Source: Bispira polyomma (Eukaryota). Taken from it: DNA of 64,000 nt. The notes below the pieces were generated by a model that worked only from the letters and a program-made list of their open reading frames with translations, did not search any database and had not been told where the DNA came from. The stretch is from contig OZ287748.1 of assembly GCA_965649765.1 (NCBI GenBank), forward strand, positions 24,738,001-24,802,000, read 5' to 3'. A program made the translations under genes and the position numbers. Each line of letters opens with the position of its first letter. Positions within the stretch are counted from its first letter, which is position 1. Of this stretch, positions 9,834 to 62,584 are shown in pieces.

Positions 9834-10788
9834 TCTTATAATAAAGATACATAGAACTGCCGCAAATAGGTACCGTGTACACATCGTGAATTATGCATTT
9901 GCTGATTTCCACGTATATAGCCGATTATTTTGCCATGCAAATAATGCCTCGCAAAGTGTATGTAACAAATTGGTAATGTGTCGAGTGACAGACGTGGGAC
10001 ATTTGCGATAAATGTCAGGTCCTAGATGTAAAATGTTTATGTGGATGTTGTAGGTCCTTAAGTATTACTAGCAGTGTAATAGAAGTAAGCACTGACTGCC
10101 AGGAAATTTAACTGTCCTGTAAATTTAATTGTTAGGCTATGTGCCGTTTCGAAACTAGTCGCCGATTTTAATCGGCACCCCATTTCAAAACCCAGCCACA
10201 GTGATTACTTGGTGTGGCCGTTTTGACACTTATTGGGATTGATTCGGAGTAAGCAGATTAACTTATGACTTTAAGATAACATTGCTGTAGTTTCAGAAAG
10301 TCATTTGCATGGAACCAAAAAACTAAGTAAACCACATTAAATTGCCACACACTCTTTGGGCTGGTTCTATTAAAGTACATATCTTAAATTAAGTAACTTT
10401 AGCATATAGCAAATAGTACCTAAGAGTGTGTGGCATTTGTTTATTAACATATTTAATGTATTGGATGACATGTCAGTGAATTCATTTTAATTTAGGAAGT
10501 TATATAATACAAATTATATTTCCCTTTGCTAAGTCTGTGTTCACGATAAGAACATATTGCGTAATTTGATTGATATAATTAAACTATAGTCTTAATAGAA
10601 GTGATGTCACACTGTTAAAAATACATGACCAATCACCTATGTGGAAAGCAAAAGCACCTTTTGTTTATAAACAAAAACTTCACTAGGTGTAAATACGAAT
10701 GATTTCTCCAACAAAAACAAGAACCATTTTATTGTGCTTTTACAGTTATATTATTTTGCATGCATGTCATTACTATTCATGCAGATTT

Positions 10789-11448
10789 ATGCTAGAAACT
10801 GAGGATGAAACAACATTACAAGGAGAAAATGAACATGTTTCCAACACTCGTCCCTCAAGTGAAACATTTACAAGCGCAGGGGAATTGGAAGTACCGGATT
10901 GGCAAACAGACCAGGAAGAAACCGCATTTAATGTCTCTTCAGAAACTACAGAGCTGAACTTTTCCGAGAGGGAATTACATGATAAAGTTGACAATTTAAA
11001 TTGTGCAATTACATCAGGTGATCTGGGTGTTTTAAGGCAGTTTATCGAGGGTAATGAACAGAACATTGTTAAAATTGCAGTGACATCAACCAGCAATCAC
11101 AGCGAGAGTCCTATTACACATGCTTGTACCCTGGGACTTATAAATGTCCTTGAGCTTTTTGCGCATCACAAGCTTCTGTTTAATATTGGTGATAAGGAGG
11201 GGTTTTATCCCATCCATCGTGCCACCTATAATGGTCATGTAGCGGTGGTGAAGTACCTGGCAGATCAATTTGGCAACGATGGTTTGGACAAGAAGACTCG
11301 CAGTGGCTTCTCTGCTTTACATATAGCTGCCAGTGTTGGTAATGGAGATATAGTGAAACTATTGGTTAAACAGGTGACACATATTGACCAAAAGTGTGAA
11401 GAAGGATGGACTGCCCTGCATATAGGAGCACAGGGAGGCTATCTACAG
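10789..11448 (+). CDS. Ankyrin-repeat protein, coding exon 1 (acidic N-terminus plus first ANK repeats)
   Basis: Acceptor tgcag at 10784, ATG at 10789, motifs YPIHRAT/SALHIAA/TALHIGA, donor CAG|gtaaaa (phase 0). The true start could lie in an upstream exon. Confidence 0.85.
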
Positions 11449-12480
11449 GTAAAATAATTCTCACATAGGATCAGGAACAAGATGATATGTAGGGCCATCA
11501 CAACCCTAAAATTATGTTTCAATTAGTCAATCATGATAATCGTGTCAATGCTAAATAGTCACTAATATATTGTAATTGACTGAGTTGACTGACTAATAAA
11601 ATATATTCTATTCGCTAATATATTCTATTCTATATATAATAAAAAGAAACGCTTATTGTATTTAAATTTTTATATGATTTTGTTATATATTGCAAAGCTA
11701 GCAATCTAGTTGTGATTATTAGTTTAATATATTTGCATTCAAATGCTATTTTACAAGTCAACTAGCAGTCAAGAACCACCTACGTAGTCAAGTATGACTA
11801 GTCGATTTGTCACAATGTCGCTAGTAATAGGTTACGATTTCATTTGCTTGCTGACTGAGAATAAATATAAGAACTGTATTTTTAAAATTTAGATAACTAA
11901 ATTAATGAATGCGTACTGTGTACATGTCATGTAAGGACGATCACAAAGAGTTAAAGAGTCTACTTCTAAAAGTTTGTATTTTGCTGGCAAGCAACTACAT
12001 GTACACTACATCTGTCCACAAAATGTATGGCACATTTAAACTTCTGAAATTTTTAATTTTGTCTGTGACACTGGGGGTCTTCACAAAAAGGGGTTAAGTC
12101 TGAGACAAAAACAACAGGCTCAAATCTGTAAAATGTAAACATTCACATAGTTTACATATTTCTAGGTTATTTTAAATCATAAAAACAATATGTGAATAAC
12201 ACTTTATTTGACAATTTTTTGCCTTAGACTTGAGACAAAAGTCTCAGACTTGATACAAAATATTGACTTAATACCTCTTTTTAATACAGGCCCAGGTGGA
12301 CAGTTTGTTTAAAACATTTTTAATCCATTATTCACAGTAAATATTTGGTTGTGCTTACATTTTTGTGTAAACAAATTTCATTGGCTAAACAAACTATAAA
12401 TTAGATTATAATGCAATCTGATTGGTTTAAACTAAGAAAATTATAGTCTACTATTATAGTATTATATCTCTATTCTTCAG

Positions 12481-13329
12481 GTAGTTCAAATCTTACTAGA
12501 ACATTCAGCTGCTGTGGACTTGGTCAACAAAGAAAATAATACTGCTTTATATCTGGCGGTTGAACATTGCCACACTGAAGTGGCCGAGGAGCTCATACGT
12601 GGCGGTGCTTCATGTAATCATCAGAATGACAGTGGCGTGTCTCCGCTCTATATGGCCATTCAGGCCAAAAATAACATCATCGCCAAAATGCTGCTAGAAA
12701 GTGGTGCCAATGTCAATATTCAGGACAAGTTAGGATGGTCACCGTTACACAAAGCGACACATATGAATGATGAAGAGCTGGTGTTTATGCTCTTGGATAA
12801 CGAGGCCAGTACTAATATACAGAATACCAAAGGAGTGACAAGTTTGCATCTCGCCATCACCAACAGCAACAACATCTGTGCGCAACTTCTTCTGTTACAA
12901 GGAGCTGATTGTAACTTGAGAGACAACTATGGCATATCACCGTTTCATGCTGCGGTGAAGTCTTCCAGTCTACAGCTGGTCAATATGATGATACGGCAAG
13001 GAGCAAACCTCGACTCGTATAATAACGACAAGTCCACTGCATTGTACGTGGCCTGCCACAAGTCAGACACTGATATGATCGCCACGTTACTATGTGCGGG
13101 CGCTGCAGTGAACGAAGGTCGAGAAGATGGTTGGAGCCCTCTACATGTGGCTGTGCAAAACGATGTGGAAGCGGCGATTGGGATGTTGATATACGCCAAT
13201 GCAGATCCCAATAAGATGGATAAACTCGGCCTCACACCTCTAGCCATGGCTGCTAGGAAGAAGTCAATGAATATCTTAAAGAGGATAGTAGTCAGTCCAA
13301 AGTGTGCTACACCTGAAGCTGTCTTTAGG
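12481..13329 (+). CDS. Ankyrin-repeat protein, exon 2 (8 ANK repeats)
   Basis: cttcag acceptor, 33-aa periodic G-x-(T/S)-(P/A)-L-(H/Y)-x-A motifs, donor AGG|gtgagt, 849 nt in frame. Confidence 0.95.
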
Positions 13330-14144
13330 GTGAGTTAATCAACTACACAGTAACACAGATTGTCATAACCTTGTCCAACATCATAAACTTGTCCAATTTT
13401 TTTGGCCTTTTAAAACATTTTTTAAACTTTAGCCACTATAAAAGATCCTTAAAAGACAGATTTACTTCATTTCAAACAATATTTACTGAACAATTTCAAG
13501 GATTTTAAATTTTGACTGAAATTTAATTGGCCAATAAATAGGATTTAAACCCACATTGAGAGGCCAGTGATTATAAAGCAAACGGTTTTAAGTTCTAACC
13601 ACTGGGCCACTATGGTCTCTTTCTGTAACTAAAACCCAGTATATGTTGAGTTTCTGTTAACTAGAAACAGGTATCAATTAGATATACCGCTGAACCCCAT
13701 TAAGTTGAACCCCAAGGGACCCCAAAATGTTTCTACTTAAGCAGGATTTCCACAAGCAGGGTCAATTTTAGAAGAAAACTTCTTTGTGAAAAGACCATTT
13801 GTTTGCCTCCAAATGACAGTAAAATTGAGTCAACAGAGTTCTGGTTAAAGTCAAGTAGAAACTAAAACCAATTCCTTAAAACAAGGTGAAGCTGGTAAAC
13901 TCTCTACAGTTATCACATTCTCAAATCTTACAAGCTAGTCTGGTGCATGTAATTGACAAAAACATGTATTTTAATAATACAAATGAAATCTACACTTTAC
14001 TTTGAAAAATACTTACACACAAATATTTTTGTATACATGTTACTCTTCAGTTAGTTAAATAATAAGTTTCGTCTTTTTTTATAAGCATATTTTATGTAAC
14101 TCTAAGAAAAGAGGAGAAATGTTGTCTCTATGCAAGGAATGTTG

Positions 14145-16393
14145 TCTTGAGAGTACTTCCTTTATTAAGTCACCTGCCAATTCTGTAGCCAAACTTTATG
14201 AACAATACATACATGACTTGGGTGATGTACTAGATAAGCATGCACCACTTGTATCCAGAATGTCAAAGAAAGATTCTGTGCCAGGCGTCAGGCGCCAATA
14301 TGAAAGAACTTGGCGAAGGGCCAAGAATCCATTAAATAGAAGTCGACTACGTCGCCAGATTGCCCGGTGCAATGTACTTGTTAATGAGGATAAGTCGGTC
14401 TATTACAGCAAACTTATCTCTGACAACAGTCACAACTCCAGGAAGCTGTGGCACGAACTGCGCAAGACCCTTAATATGGATACCAATGTGGCACTCCCGT
14501 CCCATGATTCTGATAAATCACTAGCTGATAAGTTTGCTTCCTTTTTTTCGGACAAAATTAAGAGAATTAGAGATACTTTTGTTGTCTCTGGAACTAAAAT
14601 TGATGTTCATCCTCTTTCTGATCCCCCAGAAATTACTGCCTTTACCAGAGTCTCTGAAGATGATGTTAGTAAAATAATAAGTAACTCGCCTACAAAATCC
14701 TGCATGTTGGATCCATGGCCAACATCTCTTATTAAAGAATGTAGTGATATATTACTACCATCCATTACAAAACTTGTAAACTGCTCACTTACGGAGGGAC
14801 ATGTACCTGATGGTTTTAAAACAGCTATGGTTACTCCTCTTATTAAGAAGGCTTCTCTTTCAGTTGATGACCTGAAGAATTATCGCCCTGTATCTGGTCT
14901 TAGTTTCATATCAAAACTGGTTGAACGCGTGGCTGCTAGGCAACTGTTAGATCACATCTTTGTCCACGACTTAGACAACCCATACCAGTCTGCATATAAA
15001 ACTGGTCATTCGACTGAGACAGCTCTTCTGTCTATAAAAAATGAAGTTCACCTATCTTTGTCAAGAGGGGAACCTACTGCCCTGGTATTGCTCGACCTCT
15101 CTGCTGCCTTTGACACCATTGATCATTCCACGCTTCTCAGTTGTCTTCAGACTTGGTTTGGAGTTACGGGCTCTGTTCTTAAATGGTTCACTTTCTACTT
15201 AACTGATCGTTATCAGTCGATAAAAATTGGCTCTACTCTGTCCGATCTTTGTAAACTCTTGTTTGGTGTTCCTCAAGGTTCTGTTTTGGGCCCTCTGTTG
15301 TTCTCATTATACACTGCTCCTGTCAGATTGGTTATTGGCAAATACACAGGAATAAAGTTTCATTTTTATGCAGATGATACCCAAATTTATGTGCACCTAT
15401 CCTATAAAAACACATCTACTGCCTTTGAACAGTTGAACAGGTGCCTTGACGATGTGAAAGAGTGGATGTCAACTGGTAAACTCAAACTTAATCCCGACAA
15501 GACTGAGTTCATAATGTTTGGCTCAAAACAACAGAGGGATAAGTTGAAAGCATTGTTTCCAGTTGACATCCTGGGTATTCCTTTCAGTCCAGCTGATTCT
15601 GTCAAGAAACTGGGTGTATGGTTTGACTCTGACTTTTCTTTCTCTAAACATGTTCAGAGTGTCTGCAAAAGCTGTTTTATGCAACTCCGTGACTTTAGAC
15701 GTGTCAGACGGTTTCTCACTTGTGATGCTTCTATACTTGTGGCCAATGCTTTTGTCAGTAGTAGACTGGATTACTGCAATTCACTTTTCAGGAGTCTCTC
15801 AAAGTTTAATTTACGCAAATTACAATGCATTCAAAATAGTGCAGCTAGAATTGTGTCAAACACCAGTCGATACACTAGTATAACTCCTGTTCTTAAGAAA
15901 TTGCATTGGCTCCCTGTTGAACAGCGTTCAGTGTTTAAGACAGCTACACTTGTTTATAAGTTTCTCCACACTGGGTTTCCAAAGTATTTTGCCCCATATC
16001 TTTCCACTTACCGTAGTTCCTACAATACCAGACGTAGTCAGAGTGGTAGTAATTTCCTTGTTGTTCCAAAGTTTCACCCATCTACTCAAAAGTCGGTTAA
16101 ACAGTTTGGTCACAGCTTTGCTTTTGATGCTCCCATTGTTTGGAATGGTCTTCCTGATGTGATTCGTGCTTCCCCCTCACTAGCCTGTTTTAGAAAGAAG
16201 CTTAAAACTCACTTGTACACTAAAGCATATCCACCTTAGTCTCAATCATCCCCCGGCGCGCTCTATGTTGCTGACCCTTTTTCTGTGCCTTGATTTTGGA
16301 AATTGGATAACTGTCTTTTGTGTTGATGCGCCTTAGAGTCCCCTTTGTTAAGGGGAGATTAAGCGCAATAAAAGTCTAATTACAATTACAATT
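14145..16393 (+). mobile_element. 5'-truncated L2-clade non-LTR retrotransposon with an uninterrupted reverse transcriptase ORF (to 16239)
   Basis: Motifs NYRPVS, LDLSAAFDTIDH, GVPQGSVLGP, YADDTQ, RLDYCNSL, LHWLP. No endonuclease domain. 3' tail aataaaagtctaattacaattacaatt. Flanks tatgcaaggaa(a)tgttg on both sides. Confidence 0.95.
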
Positions 16394-22820: not shown

Positions 22821-23350
22821 GTAAGTTAACATCCATCTCATTGCAATAGCCTAGTGGGTAAATCGTTGACATCAAGGGGAAACAAACAAAAACTGCCCAG
22901 CATTCAAAACAAAACAATATGCCTATACTGAACAGGAAGTGAAAACCGCAAAATTATTTACATGTTAATTTAAGTTAAAGTGCCTTTAAAGTTGGCAAAC
23001 AGTCGACACTCTAAAAATGTGATTTTATTTTCCTTCAGTTACTTGTAATAGCAAAATGCAGCAGAATGTGGAAGTAGCCTATGGGGTGTGTTTTAGTGAC
23101 TCCCGCTATCTCTAACCTATTACTGGAAAAATTTCCTACAGTTCCTGTCAATAGTTTATTTTTGGGGTTTAAAGGGTTATGCACTGCTCAAAGGTAAAAT
23201 ATGTTTAATTCACAACATCCATATGTACATGGTACACATCAGCCTCTGTGTCCAAGAGCCCAAATATTAAATATTGTTGATATCGCTATATATTTGTCTA
23301 CCTCCTGATGATATACACAACCGCTATATTAAAAACCCCTCATTTTGCAG

Positions 23351-24580
23351 ATAAATTTGTTAGGCGATGACGAAAGTCCATTGTACGAGCTGGCTCGCCA
23401 CAAAGATATCTGGGACATATTAAAACTGTGGACAAGCGGCTCTCCCAATGGCGCTAAAGCCTACACCAGCCAAAAACTGCAGACTTCTGGCTCCAATAGA
23501 GTGTCCAGTCACAGCTTCAATGTACCCGACCAGGGCATTGTGTCTCTGATGTGGACTCTTGGCGCCGGGGCAGGACATAGCTCCAGAAGCAGAACCCAGT
23601 GTGAGTCTCAGTTAAGTCGCTCAAATACCTATGGTGGGGCTCGCCCTAGGACATCAGGATCTAGGTCAGGTCAAATGATTCCACCACAACCTACCGCACC
23701 ACCTGCCATCATTCCAGCCAGCAGCGAGCCCCCTCCGTATTCCAGAGTGGCCAGGTCTAGGAGCTTGGGGCGTAGTCCCAATAGATCTGGATCCAGTGAA
23801 AGCTCACAAACGTCTGCTCCGCAGCCACAGAGCTCTCACAGACCTAGCCGGTTACTTCCCGAGTCGCCATCATTCCTTGGTTCCCTTCTCCACGCCGGTC
23901 CCGCCCAGCCACGCAGCCATTCTCCTAGCCCCCAGAGACACGGCGTAGAGAGTATGCAAAATGAGAGACGTGGCTCTGCGGCATCGGTTAGTCCCAACCG
24001 AGGACACCAGACGGCCAGAGCCACCCTCAGTGCCCCAGGGTCTGTATCTCCGCACCAGAGCCCCTCCCCAGTATTGGACGCGAACCTAATGTGTATCCAG
24101 AACTCTTTCGGTTACAGAACCAGTCTGTCCGGTCGTCCACCGCCACAGGTTGCCATGGTAACTAGCCAAGCGAGGACGTCCAGTAATCCTAGTTCTCCAC
24201 CCGCTGCCAGTCAGGTGGTGAATTCATCGCGTCAGTCGCCAGAGCAACAACAACAACAATCCTGCTCCACCAATCAGAACAGCATACAGATGGAACTTCC
24301 AGGAACACCAGAAATCCGCCGTAGCAGCCACCCGGGCGTGTTGACCTTGTACTTTGACTGTAACAACAGTAGCCCCGTGGCGATGAGTCCTACCAGTAGA
24401 AGTGCCAACCCTTCGCCGGGATACCTCAACTGCACCCCAGTCACCTCCCCAAGACAGCCAAACCTCAGCCCATCGCGCATTCCTGCTCAGCACAGTAGTC
24501 AGTCACCACCCTCAATAACTGGGTCAAGGTCAAGGGCACAAGCGGAGGCATTTACTTTTGGCAAGGAAACAACTTGCTAG
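23351..24580 (+). CDS. Ankyrin-repeat protein, terminal exon 9: last ANK half-repeat plus ~380-aa Ser/Pro/Gln-rich disordered tail
   Basis: ttgcag acceptor, 1230-nt GC-rich open frame ending ...GKETTC-TAG. Joined CDS is 3492 nt with consistent phases. Confidence 0.9.
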   Translation: MNLLGDDESPLYELARHKDIWDILKLWTSGSPNGAKAYTSQKLQTSGSNRVSSHSFNVPDQGIVSLMWTLGAGAGHSSRSRTQCESQLSRSNTYGGARPRTSGSRSGQMIPPQPTAPPAIIPASSEPPPYSRVARSRSLGRSPNRSGSSESSQTSAPQPQSSHRPSRLLPESPSFLGSLLHAGPAQPRSHSPSPQRHGVESMQNERRGSAASVSPNRGHQTARATLSAPGSVSPHQSPSPVLDANLMCIQNSFGYRTSLSGRPPPQVAMVTSQARTSSNPSSPPAASQVVNSSRQSPEQQQQQSCSTNQNSIQMELPGTPEIRRSSHPGVLTLYFDCNNSSPVAMSPTSRSANPSPGYLNCTPVTSPRQPNLSPSRIPAQHSSQSPPSITGSRSRAQAEAFTFGKETTC

Positions 24581-41818: not shown

Positions 41819-42191
41819 CTACCCCTCTAATGCATTTGGCAGAGGCCTGTTCAAGTGTACAAACACACAGGTCTTAGTCTTGCAGTCTGCATGCCAGGTA
41901 CCAGTCTTTAATGTGATTGGGATACAGGCTGTCCTCGTACAAATAGCCACACCCCAACCATTAGGACTACAGTTGCAGATGTTGCAGTCGTTGGCCTTGC
42001 AGAAGGGTTTCCCAGGGTACACTTTGCAATGAGCCACGTCATCGATGACAGCGTGCTCCGGACAGGGAGACACAAACTCACACTCAAAAGTGAATTCGTT
42101 GAACACCCAGCAACCTTTGGGAATGGGGTCTCCACATTTACTGCTTGTACATCTGATTTTTTCTTTGGAACAGCGACACTCATTGCATTTC
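41819..42191 (-). CDS. Secreted Cys-rich protein, terminal exon 6: Cys repeat plus pacifastin-like domain
   Basis: ttcag acceptor, phase 2. CKVYPGKPFCKANDCNICNCSPNGWGVAICTRTAC fits the pacifastin pattern C-x9-12-CNxCxC-x2-3-G-x3-6-CT-x3-C, apart from an extra Cys and a slightly longer first spacer. TAG at 41819; AATAAA at 41757-41752. Confidence 0.85.
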
Positions 42192-43629
42192 CTGAATGAA
42201 TACATATAGGCATTTATTATACCCAGTTAGGTCATAGTAACCATCTGTGGTGGTTTTTTAAGTACTAAACCATGACAGATCGAACTCAAACAGATCAATT
42301 AAATTACAGAAAAATTTAACTTTTTATGTCCATGTATTAAATATATGTTGATCGTTATTTTAATCAGTTCCACCGTTGAAATGTAAATTAAAACCTGTGT
42401 GCCAGTACGGGTACTTCAGTTGAAACGCAATGGAAAAGGAGAAGTAACTCTACTTAAGCAGGATTTTGCCTTAACCATTTTATTGGAAAAATCTGGTGTC
42501 AACCTAAAAATAAATTAACTTGACAGAGTTTCACTGAAAGGGCTTTGACAGTCTAATTATATGGATAATATTAAATACAACTTTCCCATCTTAAGTTTCC
42601 ATTTGTTTGTGGAGTGAGTGCACAACATTCGAAATTTAAATTGATAAGAAAATCAAATGTATTGGCTTTGTTGTTGTGTACATTTAAAATGTCGCTGATA
42701 CTTAAACAAAATCGATTTAACTAAAGGTTATAAATCAGCTATATATAGATATTTGATTTTTGTACAAAGACCTTTGCAGTTTCAGAATAGCTTAAAACAA
42801 TAGATTTTGCACTTTCAAAATGCGAAGCAATAAATAATAGAAAACAAAGATGGCATTTCCATAAAAGTCTGTAAATAGATTTTCCTGAAACTCTATTTGA
42901 AGATAGTTTGTTGTTCTCATTTTTAACCAAAACAATGACTCACAATAATATGCTTTTTTATGTGCAAATGTTTTTGTATATTTAAAAACCATTAATGCAA
43001 ATGAAAGTTCTTTTACATTACTGAAATGATATCAAAACTTTTTTAGTGTTAGTTCCAAAAACAAATGTTTATGGAACGTACAGTGTGGGTGAATGTGAGT
43101 GTTTTGGTCTTTTACGTACATACTGTAACCATTTTTTTAAACGCTTCTAAAATTCATTGAACGGGGCACAGCCATGTTGGATTTTTTGAACGTATCAATA
43201 TATAACACTAAGCTTAACACTAAACTCTAATGCTGTCATACAAACTAGTTTTAATATGGTCATTCCCTCTCCAGAGAATCGTAGAATCTAACCCATTTAT
43301 TGATAACATACAGCTTTTTTATTCAGGGAAACTACATTTGAGTTTTGACATAATTTGATTTAGTTCTAAAATGTTACCATTTCTGTTTTTGTCCTGTTGT
43401 GTACAATACTGAATCCACAGATCAGAACCCATGACTAATGAGTACAATTCAAACTACAATGGTAAAGTAAAAACTCTTTTAAGTCTACCCTGTTAAGTGG
43501 AAATCCTGCTTAAGTAGAGGGAATAGATCACGGATAAATAGTTCTGTCAGTAGCTACAAAAATAGTTCACAGTAAGTTGAAAAATATCTTATTATTTGCT
43601 TTAAAATATACTGTTGTCAGTCTTTCTAA

Positions 43630-43752
43630 TAGAAATAAAGTACACGAGCTTGTACTTTATTGGCGAATAAAGGACAACCTTCTGCCATAAAGTCCACCAT
43701 AAGTCAGTCCATTCTTCGCCAATAAAGTACTCGCCCTTGAACTTTATTTCTA
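43630..43752. repeat. Palindromic (hairpin) element
   Basis: tagaaataaagtac...gtactttattggcgaa / ttcgccaataaagtac...aactttatttcta. Confidence 0.7.
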
Positions 43753-43967
43753 CAAGAGTCTGTAGCATGGATCAAACACTTTAAACATTCTTTATATTAT
43801 GCTGGTTCTGGTCAGTTTAAAGCACTTTCATTGTTTCTAAGCTAACTCTCCCTAGTTAACCCGACTTGAGTTTTCACCACCTGTATACCAGATAATGGTA
43901 GAATAAAAGTACAATACAGTACAATTATAACAATGCAATCCAAAATAAAGCTTAAAACACAACCTAC

Positions 43968-44150
43968 TTGCATGTAAATTCTCCATCACAGCAAGACGTA
44001 GTCTCAGGACATGGGTGGACAAACTCACATCGCTGCAATTTCTCGTTAAACATGTAACAGTGGTCGGTGTAGATGTTGCTGATGTCTATTTCGTTACGAC
44101 AAACGGTGATTAGAGGCAATGGACTTGGACAGGGACTGACATAGTAACAC
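43968..44150 (-). CDS. Secreted Cys-rich protein, exon 5 (absent from the ORF track)
   Basis: gacag / gtaggt, 183 nt, phase 2-2. CYYVSPCP...HCYMFNEKLQRCEFVHPCPETTSCCDGEFTC repeats motifs of the neighbouring exons. Confidence 0.85.
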
Positions 44151-44918
44151 CTGTCAGATCAAATATTTTGGCCGGTAAATTTTGTTTAAATAATTTATCA
44201 GACAGTACATATGTACACATGCCAAAAATAGCCGCAACTTAAATATATATTGATTACAAAAGATAATAAAAATAAGTATTTAGAACAAGAACTTATATCT
44301 AAAACATATATATTTAATTCATCTGATTCTTTCTTCACTAAAATTGATCAATTTGGAAGATGTATCTTTTCAGACATCTATAAATTTACCTGTACAAGAT
44401 ATAAATTTAACAAAATCTCAAACCAGTCTAGGATATTGTATTTGAAAAGTTCATGTGTAAATGTCTTAAACCCCGTTTTGACAATAACTGAGAGGTTTGT
44501 GTTAGTTATTGTTAAATACAGATGTAGTAATATATAGCTAGAAGCTCACTGTTTCCTTTTTAAAAATATGTTTTGGAGAAAATGCTTATACATGTAACAT
44601 GTACAGTATATAATGTTTACAGTAACCATAGTAAATCTTAAGTGCTCATAGCTCACTATTGTGTACCACAGTACCTGGGCCCAAATTTCACAAAGATCAT
44701 CCAACTCAACTCCACTGTAGGCTCTGGGAAAGTTCTTGTACATGGGAATAACCTATACTTGTAACCATTAATTTTAACCGAGATTTCAGTGCTTACTTAA
44801 TGTAACTCTTTAAGTCAAAGATATTGAGACCGCAGCTGTGTGTCTCAGTCAAACTTAGTATTTTTCGATAATGCATCCACTGTATTGTAATTCCTCAAAT
44901 GAAATACAAAGAACCCAC

Positions 44919-45233
44919 CTGTCAATCACACCATCATACTTTCTCCTGACCAGACAGCCAGACCGGGAGGGATCCGGGCATCTATCTGCACCACTGCAGA
45001 ACCTCTTCCCATAAGCACATTCACATTTCTTGCACATCTTGCAGCTGCGGGTTCCAGGGGTCGCACAGGCACAACTCTCGTCCCCGATCTCAGGACAAGG
45101 CCACACGTAGCGACATTCACCTTTGACATTGGTCCAACAACCTTTATCCCGATATCTCCAGATCTGCTCACCACATTTGTTAGGGTCACCCTGACAGAGT
45201 TCATTATTCTTCTCACATCTACATTTCACACAC
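44919..45233 (-). CDS. Secreted Cys-rich protein, exon 4
   Basis: ttgcag / gtgggt, 315 nt, phase 2-2. CVKCRC...GCW...CRYVWPCP...CKMCKKCEC...GCL. Confidence 0.88.
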
Positions 45234-45677
45234 CTGCAAACATAGGACATTGTACAGTAGGGCACCATATTCTGGAAATAATCTCAAGTTCAAACTCAAG
45301 ACTCAACTTAATTGAAGGCTGTATGGAAGTCCATTAATGTAAAAATAACCTTTACTTGCATATGCATTCAGATTTCACTCATCTTCACTCCACCCAGAGC
45401 TCGGGAGACCTGAAATGTACATTTGATTCTGAGTTGAGCTTGAAAGTTTAGGGGAATATGGCTACAGAAGCTCTATTATCTGACTTTCTGTTATCAATTA
45501 ATTATACAGAACGATTCTAGAATTCACTGGATACAAAACGGACATGTTGTATTTTGGTGATTCAAAATTCTTTTTTTGGGGGAGAAATACTTTAGTAAAC
45601 AATAAACTGTTTCCTGGGGTAAAAGATAAAATATTTGGCCCATTAAATATCAAGGTTGATGAATAATAATAGAATTA

Positions 45678-45969
45678 GCCTACACTTCTATTTAACATGT
45701 TTTTCTCGGCCTATGTTTTTTCGGCTATTACACAATTCTACCAAGTGCTTCCTTTCAGCATATTTGCAACAGATAAGATCAGGGGTTGGCCGACATCTGT
45801 TGGGTTAACAGATTTTGTCTCTCAGGGAGGGAAAAAATCGGGAGGACTGTCAGATTTTTGAATAAAATATTAACAAAAAAAAAAAAAATTATTTTATTTT
45901 ATTTTATTTTACATAGAACATATCCAATGAAAGGAATCGCGTTAGAATGTTCTAAAAGGAAGTGTAGGC
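45678..45969. mobile_element. Internally deleted relative of the 37588 Harbinger MITE
   Basis: tta|gcctacacttc ... ggaagtgtaggc|tta. Shares ccaagtgcttcctttcag and aaaaaatcgggaggactgtc with the 37588 copy. Confidence 0.82.
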
Positions 45970-46121
45970 TTAGGGATGGGTCCCTCATATTTCTTTAAGA
46001 TTTAGTGATTCGGCAGTTTTTCTCTAAACAGTGTTTATACAAACACTAGAATCCAACATGACTGTGCTCTGTCCAGTAAATTCTAGAATCGTTCCACAAA
46101 TGAAACCCGAAGTGGTCGAAC

Positions 46122-46392
46122 CTGTTACAGTAAAAAGTGGGCCAGACAAAAGGTCCCGTCATTGGATTGCAGGTATTGGCTGAGAAGGTGTCGAGACAGG
46201 GATAGAAAAAGATACACATCTCTCTACTTGGACACATCCTCCAGCAGCCACTGACCTCCATCTTAATCACACTAGGCTTTACATACATATTAGGACAACC
46301 TTCTTTACTACAACCTCTAGGCTTGCCCTTCTTACAGGCACATTCTCGACATTCCTGACATCCCTCCGTCGCACATTTGTCTATGCAAATAC
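46122..46392 (-). CDS. Secreted Cys-rich protein, exon 3
   Basis: ttcctcag acceptor, phase 1. ICIDKCATEGCQECRECAC...GCWRMCPSREMCIFFYPC. The donor AG|gttcga is weak but restores CNRCVKCRC with exon 4. Confidence 0.8.
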
Positions 46393-47299
46393 CTGAGGAA
46401 AAGAGATAGATAGAGATTGCTCACTAGTACTCAGTATAATTCATTTTTATTTTCGGTGTAAGTGGATATTTTGATGAGGCAGTAAACTTTTTAGCTATTT
46501 AGTTATTGAACTTAGATAGTGAAAATTAAATCTTAGTGAAAATTTAAATTTAATCCTTTAACTAGATATTGACCAAAAATAAAAATTAAATTAAGTCCTA
46601 TGAGTGTCTTAAAGATTGTTAATTAGTGAAATGTATCTTATAGCTTCAATTTTAACTTACACAGTATTTTATTGTGAAGCATTTGTATTGCACCAGGATG
46701 GCATGTATGAATCCTGTAAGGCACTTATTCTTTGATAGCAGAGCATGATCAGTAGGCATTAGTGTGTGTCTCCTGGTCTACCTTTTGCACAAGGATGTTA
46801 TCTGTACTCAAACAAATATTGCAGGCATTCACAAATAAACTAAAACACACAACTCGTTGGTTACAACTGGACTCTGATCATGACCTTTTTCCTTCTATCG
46901 GATTATTCGTTTGGATCATAATTAGGAAGGGCACTACGGACAGGATGTCTGATCATCGATTGTGGCGCTATAGCAGTTTAAACATCAACAGTAACTATCA
47001 TGGCAGGGGCGTCAATCTAAAGAACTTCTGATCAACCGACCAACTTTCTAACCACTATGCCACTGGACACCACAATACCGAGAACTTTAGAGTAGTAATC
47101 CAGGTCTTTGTAGGGGAGGGGATTGTGCAATACAAGTAAAAGCTTAGTAAATCTTAGGGAACCAGTTATTCTGACTTGTATAATACATGGATAAACTATT
47201 TTTAACATAACAGTTTAATAATATAGTTAAACCCTTACTGTCTCCTGGTATTGTTTGATCTTTTAAATTTTGAATTCTGCTTAGATTTGGTTTAATTAG

Positions 47300-47860
47300 A
47301 ATTTGTCTTAATCCGGACAAAACAGAATTTCTTTGGCTCTAGTAAACAATGAACTGAATTATCAAGTCTCTTTCTAATGCACATCCTGGGAAATATATTA
47401 GTTATGTTTGGGGCAAATTTTTCTTTCAGCAAACATGTCACTTCTGTCTGTAAATCCTGTTTTGTCATTCTGAGAGATCTAAGACAAGTGAAATGCTATT
47501 TGTCTCGGAATACAACTTATTACTGGCCACTGCACTTGTAAGCAGTCACATTGACTATTGTTACTCATTTCTAATTAGTTTGTTTGCCAAGGATAGCAGA
47601 ATAGCTTGTATAATTACTCATACCCCAAGGTATTCCCACATATCTTCCGGTTAAATTTTGATGTGTGTTCAAAACTGCCACATTGGTCCACAAGTTCTCA
47701 ATACAGGCCTCCCAAAATAACCCAGCCTATATCTCACTTCTTACTCTCAGCAAGTCAATTCTTGCTGTGGTAATCCGAACAAATTATTCCTCTATGTTTC
47801 TACCTTTGATTGCGGCATACACAAATCAAAAGTCTAGTTCATTAGTTTCACCATAACAGT
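47300..47860 (+). mobile_element. Highly decayed L2-clade LINE fragment
   Basis: Collinear with 15485-16100 (cttaatccggacaaaacagaatt, ttctttcagcaaacatgtc, FKTATLVHKF). Confidence 0.75.
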
Positions 47861-48023
47861 GCCAGAGGTATATTAAAAGTGTGTCAGTCCCAGGAGCACT
47901 GTCTCCTAGGTATTTAGATGGAACACTTCTCTTCACTCATAGGTTGCTTCTTGGTGGTACAATAAAAATTCAGATAAAAAAATGTGGGATTAGCCCACTG
48001 AATGATTGATAGGAGAAACTCTA

Positions 48024-48331
48024 CTCCTGTATTAGGATATTCTTTTAGTGCAGCCTTTGTTTTGATAAGGCAGTATGCTAAAACAATAAAAATCTTTTAT
48101 ATAAAATACTGTATTATTCCCAGCTTACATTCTCTCTCCGTAATACACTTTCCCATATGCCAGGTGGGTTTAATCTCCAGTATTAGGATATTCTTATAGT
48201 GCAGCCTTTGTTTTGATAAGGCAGTAATGCAATAACACAATACAAATGTTATATATAAAATACTGTATAATTCCCAGCTTACATTCTCTCTGTGCGATAC
48301 ACTTTCCCATATGCCAGATAGGTTTAGTCTC
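48024..48331. repeat. ~152-bp tandem duplication covering the 3' end and donor site of the TIL exon
   Basis: ctcc(t/a)gtattaggatattc...cccagcttacattctctc...actttcccatatgccag occurs twice. Confidence 0.9.
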
Positions 48332-48511
48332 AGGACACTGGCACCTCGGTACACAATGCAAGGGCTTCTTATTGGAGGGATTCTGATCCTTGGCAGGTCG
48401 GGTACAGGTGCGGGTGTAGGGCAAGCCACACTTCGTAAAAATCTGACCCCCAGGACAATAGCAGCTCTCTGGCTTGGCAACACACTTTACCCTAAAGTTG
48501 GAGTCACAGCT
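48283..48511 (-). CDS. Secreted Cys-rich protein, exon 2 (TIL, trypsin-inhibitor-like domain)
   Basis: cttcag / gtaagc, 229 nt, phase 0-1. CPGGQIFTKCGLPYTRTC...HCVPRCQCPETKPIWHMGKCIAQREC. Confidence 0.88.
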
Positions 48512-49294
48512 CTGAAGAAGAAAAAGTTACAGGAATTGTCATAAGCTTAAAACTGACCAGACTAATATGGGGCAGTATCCACAAAAGGGCTAGACTTAGA
48601 CTAAATCTAGTTACTTTTGTGCTAGATTTAGGACAATATCTAGACTTTTTTTCTGTATTTCATGGGGCCAAAAGCAGGCATTAGAGAGACATTCCTCCAT
48701 TCATTTTGTGTCAAAAAATAAATAATTTCTGTAAAAAATTAAGACAACTGCATACATCTTAATTTAAATTTTTTTGGGCTTACACCATTTCAATATTAAA
48801 ACTGTAACCAGTCCACAAGCCAAATTTCAAAGCCAAAGATTTTAATCAAGGTCAAGCCCCTATTGAAGGTCACATGGTTGTGATTGTTCATATTGTGAGT
48901 ACCATGACCTCTCAGTTTTGTCAGACTTTTGCCAGAGTTCCTGCTACTGCTCTACTGCTGTCCATAGGAAGCTCCACATAATACAAACCATTTGAAAGTT
49001 CCATAACTGTAATTATCACCCAACCCTTTGTTATATTCCATCACAGTGGTCAGCTTTACACCAAGCAACATATCAATGTTAAAAACTTTTGTTACATTAC
49101 AACACACTTATAGTCACATATCTATTAAAAAATTAAAATAATTAAAGATTAAAAATTTAAAAACTGTCGATACATTGCAACACATTTAAAGTCACATAAA
49201 CATTATTAAAAAAAATAATAGATATTCTAAAATCACTGTGAATACTGAGCTGTTACAATGCGCTACAAGTACAACAAGTTTTAAGCTCTACCCA

Positions 49295-49492
49295 CCTCCA
49301 GGCGGCGTGAGTTCGACTCCCGTCGATCATTTGTGGAAAAGGTGGTAGTTCCTTACTGCAGGCTGCTGGTTTCAGTGCAGAACCTTGATTAACTGTATAC
49401 AATGTTTCCTCCAGCGTTTCCAACTACCAGTCCCAATATAATCTAAACAGGTACTAGAGTGGACGTTAAATATCCCAATTCAAATTCAAATT
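49295..49492 (+). mobile_element. 5'-truncated copy of the 9578 SINE family
   Basis: gttcgactcccgtcgat...tgtggaaaaggtggtagttccttact...gagtggacgttaaatatcccaattcaaatt. Confidence 0.9.
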
Positions 49493-50182
49493 CTCAGTTT
49501 CTCAGTTGCTTTCTCATACCCATGGTAGCCTAGTGGTGGCCTTAAAATCACTGGCCTCTTACCAATGTGGGTTAGAATCCTATTTACTCTTAGGTGTGGG
49601 AACATTTGTCAGTTAAGAGTGCTTCAACACTGGTTTCCTCCACCTAGACTTAGCACTTTTGTGAGTACCGCCCTAGATGCGTAAGCATAAGCACACACAC
49701 ATGTTTAAGAACAGACAACAGACAATGCGGTGGACTTCTTCCCTTTTGTCATCTTATATTTCTCCCCAGTCTGCATCTGGAAGTCATCAGTTTACAATGC
49801 TTCAGTACTGGTTTCTTCCACCATTGAATCTGGCCATTGCCATATGATCTAAGCTGTTGAAAGCGAGGTAAAACCCAACTAAATTGTAAAATTTCAAAAT
49901 TTGAGTAAAAAGGGTATTTTAACTGTTAAATTATATCTTATATTGATTGGTAAATTGTGCCATAGCTTTAATGCTGCAACAGAGAAGGGATCAGATCCAA
50001 TCCGTTGACTGGTGGTTCTGGATTCTTTTTCCTCTAGCATGCGGGAAGACGGCAATGAGGCAATATACGGGGCTGACAACAGTTGACAGTTGACTGTCTA
50101 TGTAGTGACATTGCCACTGGATGGGTTCCATTTTATATACCAAGAGTATAAATAATAAATAAATACCAATAATATTGATTAC

Positions 50183-50359
50183 CTGGTATTCATTAGCTGG
50201 GCAGTAGCATCCACATTTGGGAAGAGGAAACAAGGGATAATCTCCACAGATTTTGGGAGTGACAGGAGGACATCTGTGCTCCAGTGGTTTCTGACACTTG
50301 GAACTAACTTGTAACACTACACAACCCAAAAAAACTCCAACTACTCCGACAAACTGCAT
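50183..50359 (-). CDS. Secreted Cys-rich protein, exon 1 (signal peptide plus start of a TIL-like domain)
   Basis: aagATG start, hydrophobic MQFVGVVGVFLGCVVLQVSS, then C-rich KCQKPLEHRC...CGCYCPANEYQ, donor CAG|gtaatc. The six exons join to 1548 nt in frame. Confidence 0.85.
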
Positions 50360-62086: not shown

Positions 62087-62584
62087 GAAGAAAAAGATCT
62101 ACAGTGGGCTGATGCTTTTATTCTTGTGTATAGTGTCTGTGACAGAGCCTCCTTTTACACAGCCTTAAGGCAAATAAAACATATCCAGGACTGCAGATCT
62201 CCGGAATATGTCCCAATCCTTCTCCTTGGAAACAAGTCTGACCTAGAACATTACCAAGCAGTCACGTGCCGTGAAGTAGAAAACATCACCATCCAACATG
62301 GCTGCCAGTTTGCTCACGTGTCAGCAGCTGAACGTCACTGTTACATCACAGAAGCAATCAATGGTTTACTAAGAGAGGCAAAGAGTTATGTGCAGCAGAG
62401 ACAACTGACCAGGAAACACAGGAGGAAAAACTCACAGACTTTGAGAACTGTTTCCAAAGCTCTGGCCTTTGTATTTGGAATGAACTCAAACTCTAGAACG
62501 AACTCAACAGATGAGCCACTTACCATCCCAACTACTAATGAAAGTTGTTCAGAACAAAGTAAAACGTGTTCTAATTTAGGTTGA
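62087..62584 (+). CDS. Ras-like GTPase, terminal exon 4
   Basis: ctttag acceptor. WADAFILVYSV, G4 GNKSDL, G5 VSAAE, polybasic RKHRRK, no CAAX. Joined CDS is 702 nt. Confidence 0.92.
   Translation, partial: EEKDLQWADAFILVYSVCDRASFYTALRQIKHIQDCRSPEYVPILLLGNKSDLEHYQAVTCREVENITIQHGCQFAHVSAAERHCYITEAINGLLREAKSYVQQRQLTRKHRRKNSQTLRTVSKALAFVFGMNSNSRTNSTDEPLTIPTTNESCSEQSKTCSNLG

What the first reader, a model, noticed from the sequence alone, without database searches (positions are those of the whole stretch)
41819..50359. Secreted ~515-aa mosaic protein: 2x TIL-like + unrecognised Cys repeats + pacifastin-like domain
Seen: six GT-AG exons (50359-50183, 48511-48283, 46392-46122, 45233-44919, 44150-43968, 42191-41819) join in frame to a signal-peptide protein that is extremely Cys-rich. 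The ORF track shows it only as fragments. Known: TIL (MEROPS I8) and pacifastin (I19) are separate canonical serine-protease-inhibitor folds; pacifastins are characterised mainly in arthropods, where they regulate prophenoloxidase and digestive proteases. Inference: a multi-headed inhibitor or extracellular-matrix (mucus, shell, adhesive or immune) protein with a domain combination I do not recognise, in a probable mollusc. Best candidate for a new system in this window.
Basis: partly seen in the sequence, partly recalled or inferred. Interest (0 to 1): 0.85.

Follow-up and report, generated by a model that had tools for sequence, protein, structure and literature searches.

The report
Secreted TIL plus pacifastin-repeat protein family
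This is a real, conserved gene of a marine invertebrate (probably a segmented worm) for a secreted cysteine-rich protein built from two worn-down protease-inhibitor domains and six repeats of a pacifastin-like unit, most likely an extracellular protease inhibitor whose last repeat does the work; it is a new arrangement of known parts rather than a new system.

Summary
The six-exon, 515-aa, 75-Cys gene is real. All five junctions are conserved or bridged by single exons in paralogs and a second species, and dN/dS is 0.29 (tandem paralog) and about 0.07 (ortholog). No RNA run exists to confirm splicing. The 'unrecognised repeats' are not a separate element: the C-terminal three-quarters is six copies of one ~60-aa unit, a pacifastin-like Cys core plus a GCW..CxFxxPCP beta-hairpin. 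Only repeat 6 is a convincing pacifastin (P1 Arg; Pfam 27.2, cut-off 27.9; Foldseek top hits pacifastins, E≥0.28). Both TIL domains lack the Cys3/Cys5 pair, and TIL1 has lost its reactive loop. The gene belongs to a family of at least seven open copies plus broken ones, with relatives found only in two unnamed assemblies. It is not a kielin or SCO-spondin fragment. A 2026 paper (PMC13388995) already reports non-arthropod pacifastin domains in multidomain proteins, with TIL among their partners, so the pairing is not new; the core+hairpin repeat was not found described. Best reading: a secreted or matrix-bound inhibitor with a terminal head on a disulfide scaffold (0.45). An annelid host is likelier than a mollusc but unproven. 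Earlier scan notes cover only this same stretch.

The parts
50300..50359 (-). ATG and signal-peptide-like segment (aa 1-~20), exon 1
   Evidence: Hydropathy KD11 3.0, only hydrophobic stretch; upstream in-frame stop; same start in tandem paralogs. SignalP not available.
50183..50359 (-). Exon 1: signal peptide + first part of TIL1 (degenerate: lacks Cys3 and the Cys5-loop segment)
   Evidence: paralog first exons hit Pfam TIL, this one does not
48283..48511 (-). Exon 2: end of TIL1 and TIL2 (8-Cys TIL lacking Cys3/Cys5)
   Evidence: Pfam TIL 25.8 bits, above cut-off 24.5; alignment A5
46122..46392 (-). Exon 3: repeat 1 (pacifastin-like core 46387-46295, hairpin 46249-46193) and start of repeat 2
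44919..45233 (-). Exon 4: rest of repeat 2 (hairpin 45142-45092), repeat 3 core (45073-44978) and start of its hairpin
   Evidence: fused with exon 5 in the ortholog
43968..44150 (-). Exon 5: end of hairpin 3, repeat 4 (core lost, one Cys left; hairpin 44062-44006), start of repeat 5
   Evidence: the C4 paralog keeps a full core here
41819..42191 (-). Exon 6: repeat 5 core and hairpin (42115-42059), repeat 6, stop codon
41924..42028 (-). Repeat 6 core: near-canonical pacifastin domain (aa 447-481), Cys5-Cys6 loop at 41941-41924 with predicted P1 Arg478
   Evidence: Pfam 27.2 bits; 40.9 bits on an arthropod PLD profile vs Cys-fixed shuffle 95th percentile 19.5; PDB and Foldseek best hits are pacifastins; P1 position per PMC13388995
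41852..41902 (-). Last hairpin, which has lost its first and last Cys together
   Evidence: alignment A2; the same double loss in P0003
41752..41757 (-). AATAAA polyadenylation-signal match
48079..48177 (-). 88%-identical copy of the exon 2 3' end and donor inside intron 2 (possible alternative donor; not part of the model)

Best explanation
A secreted (possibly mucus- or matrix-bound) serine-protease inhibitor built on a disulfide-locked scaffold. SHOWN: gene structure, purifying selection, a secretion-type N-terminus, and the architecture SP-TIL-TIL-(pacifastin-like core + beta-hairpin)x6 with the core of repeat 4 lost. Repeat 6 alone has pacifastin-quality sequence and predicted fold. INFERRED: repeat 6 presents its Cys5-Cys6 loop to a protease as a canonical substrate-like inhibitor, with P1 Arg478 pointing to trypsin-like targets in this copy. 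The hairpin is closed by a disulfide between its first and last Cys, and its middle Cys staples it to the extra seventh Cys of a core, so repeats 1-5 form a stiff spacer or binding arm rather than five more heads. TIL1 is structural (loop deleted); TIL2 may or may not inhibit. The protein stays in one piece rather than being cut into peptides like insect pacifastin precursors. Paralogs vary the loop residues and so probably the target.
For: Pfam and profile scores: repeat 6 mean 31.7 bits vs Cys-fixed shuffles 11.6, repeats 2-4 at shuffle level. PDB sequence hits are all pacifastin inhibitors. The 13 best Foldseek rows are pacifastins, rmsd 1.8-2.7 A over 31-35 columns, on a model with pLDDT ~90 in that region. 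Loop TRTA keeps C2-N and C5-T. The 10 residues around that loop are among the most variable in the protein (top 1.6% of comparable windows; post hoc), with 5 non-synonymous and 0 synonymous changes vs the tandem paralog in a gene with dN/dS 0.29. P1 residues in paralogs (K, E, Q, R) match the 'ancestral' pacifastin set in PMC13388995. Dibasic pairs fall inside Cys-bounded modules, not in linkers.
Against: No activity, expression or tissue data. The Pfam score is under the cut-off and Foldseek E-values are 0.28 or worse. The closest ortholog has loop GDMA (P2 Gly, P1 Asp) and the tandem paralog GRGA, neither canonical. The C6-clade paralogs lack the repeat-6 core yet are conserved between species, so the family's job does not always need this head (those genes do keep 10-Cys TILs). 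The strict 4-residue loop is not an outlier (13% of windows as variable). Disulfide pairings are inferred from losses, not read from a structure.
Confidence: 0.45

Rival explanations
1. Structural or adhesive extracellular protein (mucus, tube, cuticle, cocoon or egg coat). The TIL and pacifastin-derived folds serve as protease-resistant building blocks and binding surfaces, with no real inhibitory head.
For: Most loops are non-canonical. TIL1's loop is deleted. Internal repeats are more conserved than the 'heads' (exons 3-4 82-88% identical to the ortholog, exon 6 65%). The C6 clade lacks the repeat-6 core. PMC13388995 links non-arthropod pacifastin domains to matrix proteins.
Against: No low-complexity, Gly/Ser/Thr-rich, VWD or lectin segment; mature Cys count is even (74), so no spare Cys is needed for polymerisation; repeat 6 kept pacifastin signatures in most clades and varies at its loop.
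Confidence: 0.3
2. True multi-headed inhibitor: both TILs and most of the repeats each bind a protease.
For: Repeats 1 and 5 keep a 4-residue loop in most members and score slightly above Cys-fixed shuffles. Eight-Cys TILs can be active (BmSPI38/39, PMC10004685). The TIL2 pre-Cys6 segment is also variable (6% of windows).
Against: Repeats 2 and 3 have 5-7-residue loops and shuffle-level scores; repeat 4 has no core; TIL1 has no loop; the active 8-Cys silkworm TILs lack the 2-6 pair, not the loop-bracing 3-5 pair.
Confidence: 0.13
3. VWC-like growth-factor or ligand binder (chordin/kielin-like behaviour), using 10-Cys two-subdomain repeats to bind BMP/TGF-beta or similar ligands.
For: The repeat has 10 Cys in two subdomains, as VWC does (own knowledge); weak Pfam VWC hits in 4 of 11 last exons, best E 1.4e-4.
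Against: No VWC hit in any window exon; the second subdomain has a different Cys pattern; the family is lineage-restricted and turns over by duplication, unlike developmental BMP binders.
Confidence: 0.08
4. Fragment or mis-spliced piece of a larger known protein (SCO-spondin, kielin, mucin/VWF, hemolectin), or a chance join.
For: TIL followed by VWC-like modules is common in such proteins (own knowledge); no RNA evidence.
Against: Signal peptide with upstream stop, stop codon with AATAAA, identical compact layout in paralogs and a second species, no VWD/C8/TSP1 hits, no such protein among database hits.
Confidence: 0.03

Closest known systems
Pacifastin family (MEROPS I19, Pfam PF05375), 'ancestral' multidomain class of PMC13388995
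   Same: Non-arthropod, multidomain, apparently unprocessed; TIL is among the reported partner domains; repeat 6 has C2-N-x-C3-x-C4, the Gly hinge, C5-x-P1-P1'-x-C6 and a 13-residue C1-C2 span (their 13-20 class); paralog P1 residues K/E/Q fit their ancestral set.
   Different: Each core carries a seventh Cys and is followed by a 3-Cys hairpin, giving a 10-Cys repeat I did not find described in that paper; four of the five cores are eroded to or near shuffle-level scores; the C1-C2 span is 11 in most paralogs.
Arthropod pacifastin precursors (SGTI/SGCI, PMP-C, multi-PLD precursors such as P0002, P0004)
   Same: Best sequence and fold matches to repeat 6; tandem PLD-like units after a signal peptide.
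   Different: They match only the ~35-aa core; they are PLD-only with dibasic linkers that release peptides, whereas here the linkers are disulfide hairpins and two TILs lead.
TIL / Ascaris-type inhibitors (MEROPS I8, PF01826), incl. 8-Cys silkworm BmSPI38/39
   Same: Two N-terminal TIL-derived domains; TIL2 passes the Pfam cut-off.
   Different: Both lack the 3-5 pair (BmSPI38/39 lack 2-6); TIL1 has lost the reactive loop; fused to a pacifastin-repeat array.
VWC/TILa-containing proteins (kielin, SCO-spondin, VWF/mucin D assemblies)
   Same: TIL followed by modules whose first half resembles VWC subdomain 1.
   Different: No VWD, C8 or TSP1; small complete gene; second subdomain differs from VWC.

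Membership tests
Pacifastin I19 (repeat 6) | Six-Cys pattern C1-X9-12-C2-N-X-C3-X-C4-X2-3-G-X3-6-C5-T-X3-C6 (PMC2689174) | tested here: inconclusive
   Met from C2 to C6; C1-C2 span is 13 (fits the 13-20 'ancestral' class of PMC13388995, not 9-12) and holds an extra Cys.
Pacifastin I19 (repeat 6) | Pfam PF05375 gathering score 27.9 | tested here: not met
   27.2 bits, 27.5. The paralog at C1:43,041,780 passes with 31.1.
Pacifastin I19 (repeat 6) | Pacifastin three-strand fold | tested here: inconclusive
   Model pLDDT ~90 in this region; 13 best Foldseek rows are pacifastins, rmsd 1.8-2.7 A, best probability 0.75, but E 0.28 or worse; the wide VIA search gave nothing above Z 2.7.
Pacifastin I19 (repeat 6) | Disulfides 1-4, 2-6, 3-5 | not testable with these tools
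   Model coordinates are not returned.
Pacifastin I19 (repeat 6) | Canonical inhibition of serine proteases through the C5-C6 loop | not testable with these tools
   Needs an assay.
Pacifastin I19 (repeats 1-5) | PLD sequence signature beyond Cys spacing (C2-N, C5-T, 4-residue loop) | tested here: not met
   Repeats 2-4 score at Cys-fixed shuffle level and repeats 1 and 5 near its 95th percentile; loops of 5-7 residues in repeats 2-3; repeat 4 core absent in this gene.
TIL I8 | Pfam PF01826 gathering score 24.5 | tested here: met
   TIL2: 25.8 bits. TIL1 has no hit in exon 1 (domain split by an intron; joined search left out), but paralog first exons hit TIL.
TIL I8 | Ten Cys, pairs 1-7, 2-6, 3-5, 4-10, 8-9 (PMC10004685) | tested here: not met
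   Both domains lack Cys3 and Cys5 by alignment to 10-Cys paralogs.
TIL I8 | Reactive loop between Cys5 and Cys6 | tested here: not met
   Deleted in TIL1 (8-column gap); present but unbraced in TIL2. Activity not testable.
VWC domain / kielin-chordin | Pfam VWC match and 10-Cys two-subdomain pattern | tested here: not met
   No VWC hit in window exons; weak hits in 4 of 11 homologous last exons, best E 1.4e-4; the hairpin pattern differs from VWC subdomain 2 (pattern from own knowledge).
SCO-spondin / VWF / gel-forming mucin | VWD-C8-TIL assemblies, TSP1 or LDLa repeats, very large ORF | tested here: not met
   None found; gene is bounded at both ends and the same size in paralogs.

The most novel reading that the evidence does not exclude
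The ~60-aa unit (7-Cys pacifastin-like core stapled to a 3-Cys GCW..CxFxxPCP beta-hairpin) is a distinct, uncatalogued 10-Cys extracellular domain that parallels VWC. It defines a lineage-restricted family in which a rigid disulfide stalk carries swappable inhibitor heads (terminal pacifastin loop in some clades, intact TIL loops in others). It would be a worked example of an unprocessed, scaffolded pacifastin outside arthropods.
Probability: 0.4. Interest if true: 0.55.

Novelty: new variant of a known kind. Interest (0 to 1): 0.4.

Why it matters
PMC13388995 proposes, from computation only, that pacifastin domains began as parts of unprocessed multidomain extracellular proteins and were 'liberated' in arthropods. 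This family is a compact, expressible test case, with one near-canonical head, several eroded copies and paralogs whose loops differ. The core+hairpin repeat matched no Pfam family, solved structure or named protein, so it is a candidate new domain model and possibly a new stable disulfide scaffold. It does not open a new pathway or mechanism: lineage-specific mosaics of inhibitor domains are common in marine invertebrates.

Tried and rejected
All database searches were exon by exon, by reference, or used natural single exons of paralogs. The exons were concatenated only inside local scripts to count Cys, list motifs and map coordinates, never as a search query. RNA support: no RNA holder found; the three runs are DNA contigs and show no splice joints. 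AlphaFold of the 249-aa paralog exon (repeats 1-4) failed (pLDDT 48.7), so its Foldseek result means nothing. The wide VIA and Atlas fold searches were uninformative, and the Atlas feature searches were below the recognition level. Hits P0005 and P0010 are spurious Cys-rich matches. Slips: alignment A5 holds a one-codon placeholder row (L026:1-3), which I ignored; the first row of A1 includes ~40 intron-encoded residues. Rejected: fragment of SCO-spondin or kielin; missed Cys-rich exons in the introns (six-frame scan); 'annelid proven by linkers' (linkers occur in other phyla, PMC6400237).
Full report
1. Observation. They total 1548 nt and read open for 515 codons to TAG. The product has 75 Cys, one in the leader. 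The N-terminus is the only hydrophobic stretch; an in-frame stop lies 120 nt upstream and AATAAA 61 nt after the stop. A six-frame scan found no further Cys-rich exon in the introns. No RNA run holds the region, and the three public runs are DNA contigs without splice joints, so co-transcription is not shown directly.

Comparative evidence for the model is strong. An intact tandem paralog (C1:24,806,2xx-24,814,133) keeps all six exons and splice sites. An ortholog in ENA assembly ERZ22147071 keeps exons 2-6 and has exons 4 and 5 as one continuous exon. A distant paralog encodes the equivalent of exons 3-5 in one exon. The introns inside TIL1 (phase 0), at the last Cys of TIL2 (phase 1) and before the last exon (phase 2) sit at the same places in the distant paralogs checked. 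dN/dS is 0.29 against the tandem paralog and about 0.07 against the ortholog (dS near saturation), and 73/74 and 66/67 aligned Cys are kept. The ortholog lies on the same contig as the ortholog of the neighbouring Ras-like exon, in the same order and orientation.

2. What it is. Pfam finds one TIL (exon 2, 25.8 bits, cut-off 24.5) and one Pacifastin_I match just under cut-off (exon 6, 27.2 vs 27.9). Both lack Cys3 and Cys5, a disulfide pair in the TIL scheme (PMC10004685), and TIL1 has lost the segment that carries the reactive loop. The 'unrecognised Cys repeats' are homologous to the last exon (hhalign probability 99.1, E 1e-18). From aa 138 on, the protein is six copies of a ~55-65-aa unit: a pacifastin-like core with a seventh Cys, then a hairpin of the form G-C-W-x6-12-C-x-F-x-x-P-C-P. 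Repeat 4 has lost its core in this gene; the C4 paralog keeps it. Against a profile of 48 arthropod pacifastin domains, only repeat 6 is clearly above Cys-fixed shuffles (family mean 31.7 bits, this gene 40.9, shuffle 95th percentile 19.5). Repeats 1 and 5 are marginal and repeats 2-4 are at shuffle level. AlphaFold of exon 6 (pLDDT 77, ~90 over the core) gives two beta-hairpins flanking a three-strand unit. The 13 best Foldseek rows are pacifastin inhibitors, though none is below E 0.28, and the hairpin matched nothing. In the last hairpin the first and last Cys are lost together, here and in P0003; these losses may share one origin. That and the predicted strand register suggest those two Cys bond, leaving the middle Cys for the core's extra Cys (inference).

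Family and range. The genome (1.035 Gb, 75 contigs) holds this gene, an intact tandem copy and a broken third copy (lost splice sites, 64-nt deletion, stop; the deletion also stands in the public contigs). These lie in a ~26-29-kb unit repeated three times. There are two more genes at C1:43.03-43.05 Mb, one at C4:49.69, two or three at C6:16.37-16.40, and broken pieces on C3. Four groups pair one-to-one with ERZ22147071 sequences. An exhaustive phmmer search of 1.84 billion cluster representatives with exon 6 found whole-exon relatives only in ERZ22147071 and ERZ21818088, both unnamed; arthropod pacifastin precursors matched the 35-aa core only. Two word-indexed searches with large paralog exons added nothing outside that assembly; these see only proteins of similar length and spliced genes of unannotated genomes are poorly covered, so 'lineage-restricted' is provisional. 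Host: invertebrate mitochondrial code, erythrocruorin-linker genes, no haemocyanin hit. An annelid is likelier than a mollusc, and other scan notes say the same (unchecked). But linkers occur in other phyla and the mitochondrial genes lie on both strands, unusual for annelids. The phylum is open.

3. How it most likely works. I favour a secreted or matrix-bound serine-protease inhibitor whose working head is repeat 6 (0.45). By the numbering in PMC13388995, the loop C476-T-R-T-A-C481 puts Arg at P1, which implies trypsin-like targets. The surrounding ten residues are among the most variable in the protein (top 1.6% of comparable windows; 5 non-synonymous and 0 synonymous changes in the core six vs the paralog), as expected of a reactive site. 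This test was post hoc and the strict four-residue loop is not an outlier. Repeats 1-5 would form a disulfide-stiffened spacer or binding arm. Dibasic pairs lie inside modules, so release of peptides as in insects is unlikely. Against this, the ortholog's loop is GDMA, and the C6 clade has no repeat-6 core though it keeps 10-Cys TILs. A purely structural role in mucus, tube or coat is therefore a close rival (0.30). A fully multi-headed inhibitor (0.13), a VWC-like ligand binder (0.08) and a fragment of a larger protein (0.03) are less likely. Architecture and selection are shown; inhibition, disulfides, location and target are inferred.

4. Comparison with what is known. It works most like the 'ancestral' multidomain pacifastins of PMC13388995, which reports such domains in lophotrochozoans, annelids included, in unprocessed proteins with partners that include TIL. 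Its supplements held as text name no matching protein. As to membership, repeat 6 is borderline for I19 (pattern met from C2 to C6, Pfam cut-off narrowly missed, fold suggestive) and repeats 1-5 fail. TIL2 passes Pfam but neither TIL has the ten Cys. VWC, kielin and SCO-spondin tests fail. I therefore call it pacifastin- and TIL-derived and do not file the whole protein in either family.

5. Novelty and verdict. The pairing of TIL with pacifastin outside arthropods is already on record. What I did not find described is the 10-Cys core+hairpin repeat and this gene family. It is a new variant of a known kind, and a handy test case for the proposal that pacifastins started as scaffold-bound domains. 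Interest 0.40; most novel reading (a distinct new domain carrying swappable heads) probability 0.4, interest 0.55 if true.

Noticed in passing
window:48079-48177 vs 48233-48331: The 3' end of exon 2 with its GT donor is copied (88%) 154 nt into intron 2; it could be an alternative donor. It fits an earlier scan note on copied splice junctions in this genome.
   Followed up: partly
window:37000-63100 and G000:C1:24,802,001-24,853,600: A ~26-29-kb unit is tandemly repeated three times. It carries this gene and a Ras-family exon (window 62126-62584; second copy near C1:24,830,400). The third gene copy is a pseudogene.
   Followed up: yes
window:41783-41821: The stop codon is followed in frame by an 11-residue acidic tail like the C-termini of both tandem copies, so this copy probably lost that tail by a nonsense change.
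   Followed up: partly
window:10699-24580: Ankyrin-repeat gene on the + strand (10699-11457, 12514-13338, probably 23345-24580) with an open 706-aa LINE-type reverse transcriptase ORF at 14119-16239 between its pieces.
   Followed up: partly
window:43404-43895: Very high-copy element with inverted repeats (arms 43625-43684 / 43698-43757) in intron 5; contig depth thousands of times the flanks. Probably a MITE-like repeat.
   Followed up: no
G000:C75 (L045): Mitochondrial contig with cox1, cox2 and cox3 on one strand and rrnS, cob and three NADH-dehydrogenase membrane-subunit genes on the other; a long palindrome between cox2 and cox3. Unusual if the host is an annelid. A nuclear copy of mitochondrial DNA lies at C11:28.93 Mb.
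   Followed up: partly
G000:C3:14,252,000-14,277,000: Broken, rearranged pieces of exons 3, 4 and 6 on both strands, 60-78% identical to the window gene.
   Followed up: partly
G000:C8:34,955,166-34,955,249: A pacifastin match above the Pfam cut-off (32.8 bits) that did not appear in the exon searches for this family; possibly a separate pacifastin gene.
   Followed up: no
L034 (G000:C4:49,686,500-49,686,652): An exon that looks ShK-like by eye, with an EGF-like exon before it, 7 kb upstream of the C4 paralog; not tested.
   Followed up: no
L036 (G000:C6:16,373,298-16,375,123): Two different signal-peptide + TIL first exons 1.5 kb apart ahead of one C6 gene: alternative first exons or a separate small TIL gene.
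   Followed up: no
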